This document shows positions 32,405-38,357 of a DNA stretch of 64,000 nucleotides, piece after piece. The stretch is taken from NCBI GenBank assembly GCA_025201805.1, contig MU619262.1, forward strand, positions 3,978 to 67,977, read 5' to 3'. Position 1 is the first letter of the stretch, and each line of letters opens with the position of its first letter. The stretch is from Parasitella parasitica NRRL 2501. Its lineage: Eukaryota; Fungi; Mucoromycota. Position numbers and translations under genes: made by a program. The notes beneath the pieces were generated by a model that did not search any database, was not told the DNA's origin, and worked only from the letters and a program-made list of their open reading frames with translations.

Positions 32405-33587
32405 ATGGTGCAATTCAAATTTCAGTTGTTCAGATTTGACGGTATATGCCAGACAGTGGCATTAACATTATGCCCATTGATGGGAAAATTTGATGGGATT
32501 GAACCAATCTGTTATTCACGAAATGTTGAAGTAGCAGGATTGTTAGTATTCCAGCCTGGTAAAGGAATCAAGGCCTTTCATCTATTCAATAACTTACTAA
32601 CATGGGACAATTAGCGACTCTAATGATGAATTTAGTTGCGCTTTGTATGACTAGTATCATGATTTATCATGTAAAAACCAAATATACAGCCGTAGGTAAG
32701 AAACTAGACACATGTTTCACCTTTGGAAGGCAATTAACAGCAGATACCATAGGCAGAAAAGAAATTGCCATGTTTTTTCAGCTGTATTTGGTGACAATAT
32801 TTTTAGAAATGCTATTGGTTACCAACATCATCCCGACTGCTTCCATATTGTATCCTGTAGGTTGGAAATGCTGAAATTTGTCGTGTTACTAAAATGTATA
32901 TTTAATCTAGTTTTTTACAGCAGCACATTTGGGACTGATTAGCGCGTCTTTTTGGTGCTTGCTATTGAACGGTTTTGTCGGATTTCAGTTTGCAGAAGAT
33001 GGCACGCCTATTAGTTTATGGGTTAGTATTTCACATTGGACGCACAGGGGTGGTGTGAGAACGAAAAAAAAAAGTCATCAGATTTTAACAAGCACATTTC
33101 ATGCCCAAAAAAGTCGATTAGGATCAGTACATTTCTGGTGGTTTTAGTGGTTGGGTTTATTGCCATGGCAACATTTAACAATCTTGGACCTTTCAGCTAC
33201 ACATCACCTGGTGCATTGTGGATCATTTACTTTATTGTAAATGGATCCATGTTTCTTGTATACACAATTTCACAGATCATTCTGGTCACGTACACATTAG
33301 ATGATAGGTGGCCCTTGGGAGACATTGCTTTCGGCATATTGTTTTTCGTGTCAGGTTTAGTCGTCATGTTTATTTTCTCGGTTGCACTTTGTGAACAGGT
33401 TAAACACTATTTGGATGGGCTTTTCTTCGGTAGCATGTGTAACTTACTGGCTGTGATGATGGTTTACAAATACTGGGATTCCATCACAAAAGAAGACCTC
33501 GAATTCTCAATAGATTCAAAGCATCAAACTTGGGAGATTCAAACGCTACTGAAGGACGAAGAGAATAAAATTGCAGCCAAGTTTTAG
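32405..33587 (+). CDS. CHS7: Chitin synthase export chaperone (Chs7 family, multi-pass membrane protein); multi-exon
   Basis: [67 protein letters not shown]. Confidence 0.95.
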
Positions 33588-33786: not shown

Positions 33787-34206
33787 ATGACATTAATCAT
33801 TCGCCAAATCCGATCATTAATCTTTGAAGCGTCTTTACATCAAAAGAAGGTTGAAAGTAAGACATCCAAAAAGACGCAAGAACGAAAGAAATCTCTGACC
33901 GTCAAGATCAGTAAAGAGCCACCTGTCATTGTGTATTTTGAGCGAGATAAATTAGAAGACTCATTTGAATGTATCTTTGATCCACAAGTCCACCATGATG
34001 ATGAAAAAGACCATCCGGATTTGTTTGAAAAATGCAAAAAGAAGGAATTGAAACCTTGGCAAAAGCCTCCCTACTGCACGCCAAATAACAACAGCTTAAT
34101 GAGTCGTTTTAAATCAACATTTAGCAGGAATAGCGTAAACACAACTGCCACAGCTGCTCCGCTTATAATGCAACAATCTAATCACTCGACAGAATATGTT
34201 GCTTAA
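33787..34206 (+). CDS. Hypothetical protein (139 aa), intronless
   Basis: ATG in A-rich context, open frame, AT-rich 3' region; no recognised domain. Confidence 0.6.
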   Translation: MTLIIRQIRSLIFEASLHQKKVESKTSKKTQERKKSLTVKISKEPPVIVYFERDKLEDSFECIFDPQVHHDDEKDHPDLFEKCKKKELKPWQKPPYCTPNNNSLMSRFKSTFSRNSVNTTATAAPLIMQQSNHSTEYVA

Positions 34207-34663: not shown

Positions 34664-36467
34664 ATGATATCAACATTAACAGAGATTGAACAAAAGCAGG
34701 AGCTAGAGAATATACCTCCATCCAGCTCGCTTACTCCTGATTCTTCAAGCGAAAGCGAATATCACGACTGTCACAGCGATGAACCTCTCACACCAATACC
34801 CATAAAGAATACATTGACAAACAACACAGTAAAAGATAGCGCGTGTGCCGCACTGTCTTCATTAGAGTATCAGCCTTACATCGCAAGCATTGTCGATGAC
34901 AAGCCACCTGCAATAACCGTTCAAGAGGGCGCTAAATGGTGTCAAAGATGCGGTACAATAGACACACCAAGATGGAGGATGGGCCCTGCTGGCCAATCTA
35001 CGTAAGAGAATAAGCTACATTTCCAGGGAATCGGTGCGAATCCTGAACCCTTGTTTTTGTTTTTTTGTTTTTTTTTTCCTAGATTGTGCAATGCCTGCCA
35101 TTTGAGATGGAAAATTCAAGGTAGACCCAAGGAGGGATACAGCTCGACTGTTTTTCCGCCACCTCACTACAACCCCAACCCTGCCAAAAGAAACAAACCT
35201 CAAAAGTCAAAAAAGCCATCGAAAAAGCCAAAAGTGGACGCTGAAATTGTGCAGGATCAAGACAGTAAGAGCCCACCTTTGACAGCTGGAAAGGGCCCAT
35301 GCATGCATTGTAAAACTACGAGTGCTCCTATGTGGCGAAAAGGGCCTTTGGGCAGTGGAACGTAAGTAACTGAAAGTAGTTTTTTTCAATGTTATTGAAA
35401 AAAAAAATGGCTAGATTGTGCAATGCCTGTGGATTAAAATGGGCAAAATCATCAACAACCGAAAAGCCTTCATCCACAACTGTGAAATCTTCATCCACAG
35501 CTGCAAAACCCGGAAAGACAACGACACCGAAAAAGGCAGTGCTGCTTCGTAATAGCAAAGAATACATCACACACGGTCTTTATTTCGACAATACCCGAAT
35601 CCGTCAGAATCAGTCATTTTCCTTTCCACTTCCTATGCATCTAGGCGAATTCTTAATGACAAAGGAGAAAGAATTCGAACTACCTCCGGATATACACCAA
35701 GAGCGTGAGTTGGGACTGATTAAAGGGCTGATGGCTGATAGGGAACCATTTTTCACTCGCATTAGATCGAATATATTTGTTGAACGAAAGCCAAATGTTA
35801 GCAAAGATGCAGTCATATGCCATTGCGTTCGCCCAGCAGAAGGAGAAACGGGTTGCGGTGATGATTGCATCAATCGAATGCTGTTCTATGAATGTGATCC
35901 TGCAGAGTGTCCTTGTGGAGATCAATGCTCGAATCGGCGATTCCAGCGCAAGGAGAGGACCAAGCAATTGCAAGTGTTTCAGACAAAGACTCGAGGCTGG
36001 GGACTTCGTACATTGATAGACATAAAGAAAGGTGATCTCGTCATTGAATATCGGGGTGAGGTTATTTCGCATGAATTGTGCGAAGAGCGAATGTGCACCA
36101 CCTATGTCAACGAGAAGAACTTTTACTTTTTAGAGTACTGCAATGGCGAGGTCATTGATGCTTGCACAAAGGGAACCGTGGCGAGATTCATAAACCACAG
36201 TTGTGAGCCAAATTGTCATATTGAAAAATGGTACATACATAACACTGTTGCGCCGCCACGAAAACTGATTGATTTTTTTGTAGGTCTCGAAAAGGAGAAT
36301 CTCATTTCGGTGTGTTTGCATCGCAAGATATCGAGGCCAAATCAGAACTTTTTTATGATTACAACTTTTCAACATTCAACAACTCTGTAGAAAGCGAGCA
36401 GCCGTGTCATTGTGGTAGTAAACTATGTAGAGGAACTATAGGCAGAAAGATATCTCGTGTTCGCTGA
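34664..36467 (+). CDS. Fusion protein: two GATA-type zinc fingers + ASH1-type AWS-SET-postSET histone (likely H3K36) methyltransferase, ~538 aa, 4 exons
   Basis: Exons 34664-35001, 35083-35361, 35415-36230 and 36284-36467 splice in frame; CQRC-x18-CNAC and CMHC-x18-CNAC; AWS CHC...CGDDCINR...ECDPAECPCGDQCSN; SET RGWGL, ARFINHSCEPNC, ELFYDYN; post-SET CHCGSKLCRG. Confidence 0.9.
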
Positions 36468-36757: not shown

Positions 36758-36851
36758 TGGAATGAAGCGCTTGTACTGGTACATCACGTCGAGAGAGAGT
36801 TGGTCAATTTTTTTCTCCTTGTTCATAAAAAAAAACAACAAACTTAAAACA

Positions 36852-38357
36852 ATGTCATTCGAGGATAACGACAATAGCGCCTCTGATCATGATTTTGGAG
36901 ATCTATTTGGCTCCGAGGACGAAGCATCTGATATTGATGACGGACGCTCTCAATCTTCAATAGAGCAGCAAAATTCGCCAGCACCAAGACCCGCGAAGCA
37001 GTCGAATGACCTTGACAATTTGTTTGGAAGCGATGATGAATCTGCATCTGGAGACGAGCCTGAAAAAAGACAAACACTGAAGCAAAGAAGGTAATTCTTG
37101 AGAGCCTTGGAGCTCTGTAAGGCAACTAAACAACCATCAAATAGAGCCCGCACACCACAGTCGTCTGAAGACGAGCGAGATTCTGGCCGTAGAAGCCCTG
37201 CAAGAGACGATGATGATGTGGAGGATGAAGATGACGACCAATATGGAAGCCACACAAATAAAAAACAACGCGTAGAAGTGTCGTTGGAAATGCCACAGCT
37301 ACCGGTACCCTACAGCGACAACAACAAGGTACTTTAAAAAACTAATCACCCTTGTGCTGAAAGCCAATTAATTATCTACGAATAGTATTATTTGGCCAAG
37401 CTACCTCGCTTTTTGGATATTGAAGTGAATCCGTTTGTGCCCGAAGAGTTCCAAGTGCAGATCGAAGAAGGCTTGTCAGAAGTACAAGTACAAGAATCTA
37501 TACGTGAGCAGATAGAAAACACAATTCGATGGAGGAAAGTTTTGGAGAATGGTTATGAGGTACTCTTTTAAGCTTGTGAAATTTTGCACTCGGCGCATCT
37601 AATACCGAATTCATGTCCATAGACCATGCAATCAAATGCACATTTAGTAGAATGGGAGGACGGTAAAGTGTCTATGATGCTGGGCGACGAATGCTTTGAT
37701 GTGGGCAGTAAACCAGTCGGCAACCAAGAACACGCCTATCTGCTTGCACATCAAACAGGGTCTGGCGCGCTGGAAAGTCAAACTGAATTCACTGACCATA
37801 TGACATTCAGACCAAGTGGGCTTAAAAGTGATACACATCGTCATCTTACTGCACAAATTGCAGATCAGCAAGTGAAAAAGAACAGGACAAAGATGTTCTT
37901 TACTGAAAAGGATCCGGAATTGATGAAACAAGAACTCGAATCACAAGAAAATGAACGTCTGAAGGCGCAAAAGAAATTGGAGCTTCAACGCAGAAAAGCC
38001 GATATGCGTTATGGAGATATGGGCTCACGCCGTAATAATGAATTTAGTGATTACAACGATGTAGCTGATTATTCATCGAGCCATGGAGCTAGCGGACGGG
38101 GAGCACAAGACCGCTACGAAGACGATTTTGTTGTAGATGATGATGAATACGATGAAGAAGAAGAGAGATCAAGGGAGAACAGATTATCACAAGCAAAAAG
38201 TTCGGGTATGGATAGATACAAGCGCAGTCGCTATAATGAAGACGAAGACGAAGACGAGGAAGACGAAGACGAAGATTATGGAATTGATGACGACGAAGAC
38301 GAGGAGGTTGTGGTTAGAAGACATAAGCGTAATCATATCTCGAGCGATGAAGAATAA
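36852..38357 (+). CDS. LEO1: Paf1 complex subunit Leo1; multi-exon
   Basis: Acidic DLFGS repeats, AKLPRFLDIEVNPF, ENTIRWRK, QSNAHLVEWEDGKVSMMLGDE, MTFRPSGLKSDTHRHLT. Confidence 0.9.

What the first reader, a model, noticed from the sequence alone, without database searches (positions are those of the whole stretch)
34664..36467. Double GATA zinc finger fused to an ASH1-type SET methyltransferase: candidate self-targeting chromatin writer
Seen: two C-x2-C-x18-C-x2-C GATA fingers precede an AWS-SET-postSET module. The second half of finger 2 (LCNACGLKW) lies in the same exon and frame as the AWS/SET domain, so the fusion is not a splicing guess. The protein stops right after post-SET (no WW/SRI as in Set2) and has the KEYITHGLY...FPLPMHLGEFLM...FELPPDI block resembling the ASH1 pre-AWS region. 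Known: ASH1/Set2 enzymes methylate H3K36, and GATA fingers usually bind DNA sequence-specifically. Inference: a histone methyltransferase carrying its own DNA-reading module, independent of Pol II CTD recruitment. I do not recall this architecture being characterised. It also sits directly upstream of the Paf1C gene LEO1.
Basis: partly seen in the sequence, partly recalled or inferred. Interest (0 to 1): 0.82.

Follow-up and report, generated by a model that had tools for sequence, protein, structure and literature searches.

The report
ASH1 methyltransferase carrying GATA fingers
A real four-exon gene of a Mucor-like fungus encodes an ASH1-type histone H3K36 methyltransferase that carries two GATA zinc fingers; the arrangement is conserved across most of the phylum Mucoromycota, I found no paper describing it, and it could explain how this enzyme finds its targets.

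Summary
Window 34664-36467 (+) is a four-exon gene of 538 codons. It encodes two C-x2-C-x18-C-x2-C GATA fingers, each split by a phase-2 intron at the same spot. After them come an FxLP block, AWS, SET and post-SET, and the stop lies 12 residues after the last post-SET cysteine.

The catalytic part matches human ASH1L best (182 bits, against 130 for SETD2). The match includes the pre-AWS block that is the published MRG15-binding, activating motif of Ash1.

The fusion is not a splicing guess:
- Annotated orthologues map from the same ATG to the same stop.
- Three public contigs carry fingers and SET in one uninterrupted ORF.
- All four exons are under purifying selection.

GATA+AWS+SET occurs in Mucorales, Umbelopsis, Endogone and Glomeromycotina. 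It does not occur in Mortierellomycotina, chytrids or Dikarya. All eight zinc ligands are invariant in 12 two-finger orthologues.

The same genome has separate Set2-like genes and two MRG genes. No paper in the held library describes this architecture, and databases call the proteins hypothetical or ASH1L-like.

DNA binding and H3K36 activity are inferred, not shown.

Verdict: a new variant of a known kind, of moderate to high interest.

The parts
34664..35001 (+). Exon 1: start codon, Ser/Thr/Glu-rich N-terminus, and the first half of GATA finger A (from 34940)
   Evidence: GATA positions 1-19. Orthologues start at the same ATG. dN/dS is 0.19 against the relative in L002.
34940..35098 (+). 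GATA finger A, C-x2-C-x18-C-x2-C, interrupted by intron 1 (35002-35082, 81 nt, phase 2)
   Evidence: The four cysteines are invariant in 12 orthologues.
35083..35361 (+). Exon 2: second half of finger A with its conserved extension, a PPxY motif (35156-35170), a Lys/Arg-rich stretch (35183-35233), and the first half of finger B (from 35300)
   Evidence: dN/dS is 0.26.
35300..35430 (+). GATA finger B, C-x2-C-x18-C-x2-C, interrupted by intron 2 (35362-35414, 53 nt, phase 2, same position as in finger A)
   Evidence: In the Mucor orthologue, the best full-length, ungapped solved match is the x18 finger of Arabidopsis GATA18 (46.9 bits); the two-finger GATA-1 and GATA-3 chains total more (53.8 and 51.3 bits). 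The cysteines are invariant.
35415..36230 (+). Exon 3: end of finger B, a Ser/Thr/Lys linker, the FxLP block, AWS and most of SET, in one open frame
   Evidence: dN/dS is 0.086.
35617..35694 (+). Pre-AWS ASH1-specific block with two FxLP motifs. The second (FELP, 35674-35685) aligns to the FQLP of human ASH1L, which is the MRG15-binding site.
   Evidence: alignment to 6INE and 6AGO; present in animal ASH1L-type and fungal Ash1-like proteins, absent from Set2, NSD and ASHH2; PMC5963871.
35845..35952 (+). AWS domain
   Evidence: 66.6 bits, cut-off 23.3.
35995..36365 (+). SET domain, interrupted by intron 3 (36231-36283, 53 nt). The GWG, NHSC-x-PN and ELFYDY motifs are present.
36405..36467 (+). 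Post-SET C-x-C-x4-C (36405-36428), a 12-residue tail and the TGA stop (36465-36467). Nothing follows.
   Evidence: ASH1L is best at 45 bits; SETD2 scores 26.

Best explanation
This is the ASH1 orthologue of a Mucoraceae fungus, the Pol II-independent H3K36 methyltransferase. In the Mucoromycota lineage it carries N-terminal GATA-type zinc fingers in place of the AT hooks, bromodomain, PHD and BAH modules of animal ASH1.

Shown here:
- The gene is one transcription unit by anatomy.
- Its catalytic module is ASH1-type and has intact SET motifs.
- It carries the FxLP block through which MRG15 binds and activates Ash1 in flies and humans.
- It lacks the SRI and WW modules that tie Set2 to elongating polymerase.
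- The genome has separate Set2-like genes and MRG-domain genes.
- The fingers are canonical, conserved and under purifying selection across most of the phylum.

Inferred mechanism:
- The two fingers bind GATA-type DNA motifs and tether the enzyme to particular loci.
- An Eaf3/MRG15-like partner docks on FxLP and relieves the autoinhibited SET domain.
- Nearby nucleosomes are then methylated at H3K36 without need of transcription.
For: Anatomy and domains.

ASH1 assignment:
- ASH1L scores 181.8 bits against 130 for SETD2 and 126 for NSD1 on exon 3, and 45 against 26 on exon 4.
- The reciprocal check holds: the other AWS gene on contig C91 matches fungal Set2 best, with ASH1L last.
- In the tree the window falls in a fungal Ash1-like clade (98/94) apart from the Set2/SETD2/ASHH2 clade (95/82).
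- The FxLP block lies 45-55 residues before AWS and is shared only with animal ASH1L-type and fungal Ash1-like proteins.
- Its role in MRG15 binding and activation is published (PMC5963871).
- There are two MRG genes in the genome.

Fusion is real:
- Orthologue-to-genome alignments agree with the model.
- Single uninterrupted ORFs with fingers plus SET occur in L001, L044 and L045.
- dN/dS is 0.04-0.26 for all four exons.

Fingers are functional-looking:
- All eight Cys and the W-R and G-P core are invariant in 12 orthologues whose mean column identity is only 36%.
- Among solved structures, the only full-length ungapped match to finger B is the x18 finger of a plant GATA factor (46.9 bits); two-finger GATA-1 and GATA-3 chains total slightly more.

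Distribution.
Against:
- DNA binding, sequence specificity, H3K36 activity and MRG binding are all untested.
- The deep SET tree does not place animal ASH1L as sister to the fungal clade, although holding them together is not rejected (AU p = 0.24).
- The basic tail that follows classical GATA fingers is weak after finger B.
- GATA motifs are so frequent in an AT-rich genome that they may not give locus specificity.
- Mortierellomycotina orthologues do without fingers, so the fingers are not indispensable to the enzyme.
Confidence: 0.6

Rival explanations
1. The fingers give only general, low-specificity affinity for DNA or linker DNA. On this reading they are a functional stand-in for the AT hooks of animal ASH1. 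The enzyme is a broadly acting H3K36 methyltransferase whose distribution is set by other cues, such as the MRG partner reading existing H3K36me, or exclusion by transcription-coupled Set2.
For: Animal ASH1 uses AT hooks and BAH for chromatin attachment (abstract of PMC8426247). The short GATA core motif is very frequent in a genome of about 40% GC. The linker after finger B is Ser/Thr-rich and lacks a strong basic tail. Mortierellomycotina orthologues lack fingers altogether.
Against: Two distinct finger types (A and B) have each kept their own signature since the split of Endogonales, Umbelopsidales and Mucorales. That is more than unspecific affinity would require.
Confidence: 0.22
2. The GATA fingers act as protein-interaction or regulatory modules rather than DNA readers. 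They might dock other transcription factors, as the N-finger of GATA-1 docks FOG, or fold back on the SET domain.
For: Some GATA-type fingers are known to mediate protein contacts (general knowledge). Finger A has a family-specific conserved extension, and in Mucoraceae a PPxY motif that looks like a WW-domain ligand.
Against: Both fingers keep the full DNA-binding-type core (T-P-x-W-R, G-P, L-C-N-A-C-G/H) that is shared with plant GATA factors in the PDB match and with the PAS-GATA, white-collar-type genes of this genome. No evidence of intramolecular packing was obtained; the AlphaFold model was too poor to say.
Confidence: 0.1
3. The fusion is an annotation or splicing artefact: a GATA gene and an ASH1 gene lie side by side and are transcribed separately.
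For: In Phycomyces blakesleeanus and Umbelopsis sp. PMI_123 the public annotations call two adjacent genes. Many database models are SET-only. There is no RNA-seq for this genome.
Against: The last six residues of finger B, which hold two of its four zinc ligands, lie in the same open exon as AWS-SET and would be useless alone. The split-finger halves with the same intron are also present upstream of the SET gene in Phycomyces and Umbelopsis. Other annotations of the same genera are fused (Phycomyces nitens, Umbelopsis ramanniana). Three contigs carry fingers and SET in one ORF colinear with the spliced model.
Confidence: 0.03
4. The enzyme does not methylate H3K36. It has another histone or non-histone substrate, or is catalytically silent and acts as a GATA-type transcription factor with a SET-shaped scaffold.
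For: Activity was not tested. ASH1 enzymes are autoinhibited and weak in vitro (PMC5963871).
Against: The GWG, NHSC-x-PN and ELFYDY motifs, the post-SET cysteines and the loop between SET and post-SET all align to ASH1L without loss. The SET exons have the lowest dN/dS (0.04-0.09). All characterised members of the AWS-SET-postSET group target H3K36 (general knowledge; PMC6251624).
Confidence: 0.05

Closest known systems
Animal ASH1 / ASH1L (catalytic subunit of the Ash1-MRG15-Caf1 complex)
   Same: An AWS-SET-postSET core with the highest sequence score of all solved structures. The FxLP block lies at the same distance before AWS. An autoinhibitory-loop region of similar length and sequence is present.
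   Different: There are no AT hooks, bromodomain, PHD or BAH; the protein ends after post-SET. It has two GATA fingers instead and is only 538 residues long. The SET tree does not recover a sister relation, though it does not reject one.
Fungal ASH1 of Dikarya (Neurospora ASH1/NCU01932; Fusarium and Magnaporthe Ash1)
   Same: It falls in the same fungal Ash1-like clade as the ascomycete and basidiomycete representatives sampled (98/94). Like them it has a C-terminal AWS-SET and coexists with a separate Set2. The published role there is Pol II-independent H3K36 methylation of poorly transcribed genes (PMC6251624).
   Different: The Dikarya, chytrid, aphelid and Mortierellomycotina members sampled have no GATA finger. 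Mucorales also lack PRC2 and mostly 5mC (PMC9963178), so the chromatin context differs.
Set2 / SETD2
   Same: The same AWS-SET-postSET fold family and the same expected target lysine.
   Different: It has no SRI or WW domain. The genome has its own Set2-like genes on contigs C56 and C91. The window gene lies outside the Set2/SETD2/ASHH2 clade.
PRDM9 and other PRDM proteins (analogy only)
   Same: A SET-type lysine methyltransferase and a sequence-reading zinc-finger module in one polypeptide, so that DNA sequence instructs where histones are marked (general knowledge).
   Different: PRDM proteins belong to the PR/SET subfamily, use C2H2 finger arrays and occur in animals. There is no homology of the arrangement.
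White-collar-type and plant-type (x18) GATA fingers
   Same: The 18-residue loop and the W-R-x-G-P ... L-C-N-A-C-G-L-x-W signature. In this genome the phase-2 intron sits at the identical spot in five other GATA genes, three of them PAS+GATA. The only full-length ungapped solved match is the x18 finger of Arabidopsis GATA18 (46.9 bits).
   Different: No PAS or LOV domain is present, and the fingers sit at the N-terminus of an enzyme. Finger A has its own conserved extension.

Membership tests
ASH1 family of H3K36 methyltransferases | AWS-SET-postSET catalytic module with intact SAM-binding and catalytic motifs | tested here: met
   Pfam AWS scores 66.6 bits and SET 57.1 + 20.1 bits. The GWG, NHSC-x-PN, ELFYDY and C-x-C-x4-C motifs align to ASH1L.
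ASH1 family of H3K36 methyltransferases | SET domain closer to ASH1 than to Set2/SETD2 or NSD | tested here: met
   By phmmer against the PDB, ASH1L scores 181.8 bits overall, or 156 bits on the region shared with SETD2 (130) and NSD1 (126). On exon 4 the scores are 45 against 26. The genome's other AWS gene gives the opposite order.
ASH1 family of H3K36 methyltransferases | Phylogenetic placement with ASH1 orthologues | tested here: inconclusive
   The window sits in a fungal Ash1-like clade with 98/94 support and is separate from Set2. The animal ASH1L-type rows (with BAH or bromodomain) branch apart in the free tree. Holding them with the fungal clade costs 8.4 lnL, AU p = 0.24.
ASH1 family of H3K36 methyltransferases | FxLP MRG15-binding motif about 40-55 residues N-terminal to AWS | tested here: met
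   FELP at 35674-35685 aligns to the FQLP of ASH1L in the MRG15 co-crystal constructs. The motif is shared by animal ASH1L-type and fungal Ash1-like rows. It is absent from most Set2, NSD and ASHH2 rows, though plant ASHH3 and one PWWP row have an FxLP nearby. The definition is taken from PMC5963871.
ASH1 family of H3K36 methyltransferases | H3K36 mono/di-methylation of nucleosomes, stimulated by MRG15 | not testable with these tools
   This needs biochemistry. Two MRG-domain genes exist in the genome.
ASH1 family of H3K36 methyltransferases | Animal-type accessory modules (AT hooks, bromodomain, PHD, BAH) | tested here: not met
   Pfam finds none, and the protein ends 12 residues after post-SET. 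These modules define the animal subfamily, not fungal Ash1.
Set2 / SETD2 | SRI domain (and WW) C-terminal to post-SET, binding the phosphorylated Pol II CTD | tested here: not met
   There is no sequence after post-SET and no SRI or WW hit. Orthologues likewise carry only GATA, AWS and SET.
GATA zinc-finger proteins (Pfam PF00320) | C-x2-C-x17/18-C-x2-C with the T-P-x-W-R and L-C-N-A-C core | tested here: met
   Both fingers read x2-x18-x2. The halves are matched by Pfam exon by exon. Intact orthologues score up to 97.5 bits against a cut-off of 26.8. The ligands are invariant.
GATA zinc-finger proteins (Pfam PF00320) | Sequence-specific binding to (A/T)GATA(A/G)-like DNA | not testable with these tools
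   Binding is inferred from conservation of the core. A basic stretch follows finger A (35183-35233), but the tail after finger B is weakly basic.

The most novel reading that the evidence does not exclude
Mucoromycota use DNA-sequence-instructed H3K36 methylation. The ASH1 orthologue reads GATA-type elements directly through fingers that share their ancestry with white-collar-type GATA fingers (same signature and same intron position). It then lays down Pol II-independent H3K36me at those loci. In a phylum without Polycomb and largely without cytosine methylation, this would provide a heritable gene-regulatory layer. It might compete or cooperate with light- and nutrient-responsive GATA factors at the same sites.
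Probability: 0.3. Interest if true: 0.8.

Novelty: new variant of a known kind. Interest (0 to 1): 0.6.

Why it matters
How the Pol II-independent H3K36 methyltransferases are targeted is an acknowledged gap. [quoted passage not shown] Here an ASH1 enzyme has a built-in, canonical DNA-reading module. It has been conserved since the common ancestor of Mucorales, Endogonales, Umbelopsidales and arbuscular mycorrhizal fungi.

This gives a directly testable targeting hypothesis in organisms with genetic tools: Mucor lusitanicus has an orthologue, P0122. These organisms include agents of mucormycosis and the mycorrhizal symbionts of most land plants. They lack PRC2, so H3K36me may carry more of the regulatory load.

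The work also shows that many public gene models of this locus are truncated or split.

Tried and rejected
- The four exons were not joined into one protein for any search. All searches of the window used single exons by reference, and full-length analyses used database orthologues.
- The protein-atlas search with the Mucor orthologue gave only generic SET clusters below 0.9.
- AlphaFold2 on the Mucor orthologue with a 12-row alignment gave mean pLDDT 40. It was useless for domain packing, so no fold search was run.
- A search of the own genome for SRI (PF08236) found nothing, but its control found nothing either, so it says nothing. The Set2 identity of the other AWS genes rests.
- Tudor-knot hits do not coincide with the two MRG genes, so the chromo-barrel of the putative Eaf3/MRG15 partner is unconfirmed.
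- The large representative-protein search was not run, on grounds of cost, because the word search had already resolved the family.
- The idea that LEO1 adjacency has functional meaning was rejected. It is Mucorales-level synteny (window, L002-L005, Phycomyces) and is absent in Umbelopsis and L001.
- Independent acquisition of fingers in Glomeromycotina was considered, because their finger is C-x4-C. The C-x4-C finger B of Umbelopsis bridges the two forms, so a single origin is favoured but not proven.
Full report
**The observation.** The DNA between 34664 and 36467 on the + strand reads as a four-exon gene. The exons are 34664-35001, 35083-35361, 35415-36230 and 36284-36467. The introns are 81, 53 and 53 nt, all GT..AG, which are sizes usual for a Mucorales genome. 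The coding length is 1617 nt, or 538 codons plus the stop.

Each exon was sent by reference, and full-length questions were asked of database orthologues.

Pfam, exon by exon, finds:
- GATA model positions 1-19 at the end of exon 1, and again at the end of exon 2.
- GATA positions 22-33 at the very start of exon 3, followed in the same open frame by AWS (1.9e-18) and SET (2.7e-15).
- The last part of SET in exon 4.

Once the introns are removed, both fingers read C-x2-C-x18-C-x2-C. Both are split at the same place and phase, just before L-C-N-A-C. The post-SET C-x-C-x4-C is followed by 12 residues and the stop, so there is no room for WW or SRI.

**Is the fusion real?** Four lines of evidence say yes.
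- The last six residues of finger B carry two of its four zinc ligands. They lie in the same stop-free exon as AWS-SET.
- The annotated proteins of Parasitella parasitica, Mucor circinelloides and Mucor lusitanicus align to the window from residue 1 at 34664 to the last codon at 36464, with breaks exactly at my intron bounds.
- Three public Logan contigs carry fingers, AWS and SET in one uninterrupted ORF that is colinear with the spliced model. They are L001 (458 aa), L044 (601 aa in a 2373-nt contig with UTR-like flanks) and L045 (591 aa in an 1824-nt contig ending in sequencing adapter). Every genomic copy I read in Mucorales and Umbelopsis has the finger introns (window, L002, L042, L043). 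L044 and L045 are therefore most simply spliced transcripts, but I could not check their library type.
- Against the relative in L002, dN/dS is 0.19, 0.26, 0.09 and 0.04 for exons 1 to 4 at dS of about 0.9-1.2. The finger exons are therefore coding and constrained.

Direct RNA evidence for this genome is missing.

**What the catalytic half is.** Against all PDB chains, exon 3 matches human ASH1L best: 181.8 bits overall, and 156 bits on the stretch shared with the other enzymes. SETD2 scores 130, NSD1 126 and fungal Set2 about 100. Exon 4 gives ASH1L 45 bits against SETD2 26. The GWG, NHSC-x-PN and ELFYDY motifs and the post-SET cysteines are in place.

The genome (32.8 Mb) has three AWS genes. 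The one on contig C91 gives the reverse order, with fungal Set2 first and ASH1L last. Its paralogue on C56 has the same Set2-like N-terminal layout.

A 66-row maximum-likelihood tree of the AWS-SET-postSET region puts the window next to Parasitella. It sits inside a fungal Ash1-like clade (98/94) that holds Olpidium, ascomycete, basidiomycete, aphelid, chytrid and Mucoromycota rows. This clade is separate from a Set2/SETD2/ASHH2 clade (95/82) that holds the SRI-bearing rows. The animal ASH1L-type rows, recognised by BAH or bromodomain, are not sister to the fungal clade in the free tree. Forcing them together is not rejected (AU p = 0.24).

**The pre-AWS block.** The best PDB alignment (6INE and 6AGO, the ASH1L constructs solved with MRG15) starts 43 residues upstream of the start reached by the shorter ASH1L catalytic-domain constructs. 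It aligns the window's FELP (35674-35685) with the FQLP of ASH1L.

Schmähling et al. (PMC5963871) showed three things:
- Drosophila and human Ash1 carry a single FxLP about 40 residues before AWS.
- This binding raises H3K36 dimethylation several-fold.

I scanned all tree rows for the extended block. It lies 45-70 residues before AWS in the animal ASH1L-type rows and in nearly all fungal Ash1-like rows. It is absent from the SRI-bearing Set2 rows, SETD2, NSD, ASHH2, and the Dictyostelium and oomycete rows. Plant ASHH3 and one PWWP row have an FxLP nearby.

The genome has two MRG-domain genes. I could not confirm their chromo-barrel.

**The fingers.** The Mucor orthologue's finger region matches only GATA factors in the PDB. 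The only match that covers finger B in full without a gap is the 18-residue-loop finger of Arabidopsis GATA18 (46.9 bits); the two-finger GATA-1 and GATA-3 chains total slightly more (53.8 and 51.3 bits).

Two finger types can be told apart:
- Type A is followed by a conserved extension ending in Y/F-P-P-P. In Mucoraceae this extends to a PPxY motif and then a Lys/Arg-rich stretch.
- Type B has the G-L-K/R-W-A-K ending typical of white-collar and plant fingers.

In an alignment of 12 two-finger orthologues from Mucorales and Endogone, mean column identity is only 36%. Even so, all eight cysteines, the W-R pair, G-P and C-N-A-C are invariant.

In this genome, five other GATA genes have the intron at the identical position. 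Three of them are PAS+GATA, that is, white-collar type. The ASH1 fingers probably share ancestry with that finger class. This is inference from signature and intron position, not from a tree.

**Distribution.** Two word-index searches covered proteins of 183-1011 residues. GATA+AWS+SET was found in:
- About twenty genera of Mucorales, among them Mucor, Parasitella, Rhizopus, Phycomyces, Apophysomyces, Circinella and Blakeslea.
- Umbelopsis ramanniana.
- Endogone.
- Glomeromycotina: Rhizophagus, Glomus, Funneliformis, Cetraspora, Dentiscutata, Diversispora, Entrophospora and Acaulospora.

Two fingers occur in Mucorales, Endogone and Umbelopsis. Glomeromycotina have one, with a C-x4-C first pair. 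Finger B of Umbelopsis also has C-x4-C, which links the two forms.

No finger is present in:
- The long Mortierellomycotina orthologues, nor within 4 kb upstream in Lobosporangium.
- The chytrid, aphelid, Olpidium, basidiomycete or ascomycete rows.

On the gene tree, this fits one gain at the base of Mucoromycota and a loss in Mortierellomycotina. Cunninghamella retains a decayed finger.

Many SET-only database models are annotation truncations. In Phycomyces blakesleeanus and Umbelopsis sp. PMI_123 the fingers, with the same intron, sit just upstream. There they are annotated as a separate gene or not annotated at all.

**Literature.** I found no description of the architecture.
- Two pan-fungal SET surveys never mention GATA (PMC9692433 and PMC12581908). 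The first describes fungal ASH1-like proteins as AWS+SET only and their function as unknown.
- The Mucoromycota methyltransferase survey (PMC9963178) does not mention Ash1. It confirms that Mucorales lack PRC2 and mostly 5mC.
- Searches combining GATA, SET, AWS, Ash1, Mucor, Mucorales and H3K36 returned nothing relevant.
- The library lacks most subscription journals, so this is absence of evidence only.
- Databases name these proteins hypothetical, SET domain-containing or ASH1L-like.

**Mechanism and rivals.** Three things are shown: an ASH1-type, MRG-dockable, SRI-less methyltransferase; physical fusion to two conserved canonical GATA fingers; and separate Set2 genes in the same genome.

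The mechanism is inferred. The fingers tether the enzyme to GATA-type DNA, an Eaf3/MRG15-like partner opens the autoinhibited SET domain, and H3K36 is methylated independently of transcription.

- The main rival is that the fingers only supply general DNA affinity, as the AT hooks do in animal ASH1 (PMC8426247 abstract).
- Lesser rivals are a protein-interaction role for the fingers, a different substrate, and an annotation artefact. The anatomy all but excludes the last.
- SET enzymes with their own DNA readers are known in principle (PRDM9, the AT hooks of ASH1, the CXXC domain of MLL; general knowledge). The concept is therefore not new. The ASH1-GATA combination and its phylum-wide conservation are.

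**Surroundings.** LEO1 lies downstream (Pfam Leo1 at 37392-37568 and 37626-38354) and Chs7 upstream (33036-33587). The order Chs7, a conserved 139-aa ORF, GATA-ASH1, LEO1 is kept in a related species (L002-L005). LEO1 also lies downstream in Phycomyces, but not in Umbelopsis or L001. I read this as lineage synteny, not as a functional link to Paf1C.

**Verdict.** This is a real, intact gene. It is the Mucoromycota form of ASH1, distinguished by GATA fingers. It is a new variant of a known kind, and I found no paper that characterises it. It gives a testable answer to how a Pol II-independent H3K36 writer might be targeted.

Noticed in passing
window 35156-35170 and 35183-35233: Finger A is followed by a conserved extension ending in Y/F-P-P-P. 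In Mucoraceae and close families this reads PPxY, a WW-domain ligand consensus. A Lys/Arg-rich stretch follows, which could be a nuclear localisation signal or a DNA-contacting tail.
   Followed up: partly
G000 contigs C20:~260.9 kb, C42:~83.3 kb, C4:~359.0 kb, C84:~4.7 kb, C87:~136.3 kb (L046-L050): Five other GATA genes of this genome have an x18 finger with the intron at exactly the same position as both ASH1 fingers. Three of them are PAS+GATA, that is, white-collar type.
   Followed up: partly
L042 2950-3680 (Phycomyces blakesleeanus); L043 3261-3440 (Umbelopsis sp. PMI_123): Public annotations split the locus into a GATA gene and a SET gene, or leave finger B unannotated. Many SET-only models in the databases (Cokeromyces, Radiomyces, Pilobolus and others) may be similar truncations; only the Phycomyces and Umbelopsis loci were checked.
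   Followed up: partly
window 33787-34206 (+): A 139-aa ORF lies between Chs7 and the ASH1 gene. It has no Pfam hit, but a 140-aa ORF sits at the same place in a related species (L002 3276-3698). This could be a small conserved gene of unknown function.
   Followed up: no
G000 C56:4551-4667 (L007) and C91:59343-59447 (L008): Two Set2-like paralogues have AWS near the N-terminus. This fits the reported expansion of the SET2 group in Mucoromycota (PMC9692433). Their SRI domain was not detected in the six-frame search.
   Followed up: partly
P0138-P0140, P0144 (Glomeromycotina); P0133 (Endogone): Glomeromycotina orthologues have a single finger with C-x4-C as the first ligand pair and an animal/AreA-like tail. 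They and Endogone continue for about 80-120 residues beyond post-SET, whereas the Mucorales proteins stop at once.
   Followed up: no
window 35389-35414: ATG codons inside intron 2 (35389, 35407) are in frame with exon 3. The mechanical ORF 35389-36390 would therefore encode a finger-less AWS-SET protein if transcription started there, or after intron retention. There is no evidence that this happens.
   Followed up: no
window 36849-38357 (+): The LEO1 (Paf1 complex) gene, with very acidic N- and C-terminal regions, lies directly downstream. Its adjacency to the ASH1 gene is conserved in Mucorales but not beyond.
   Followed up: yes
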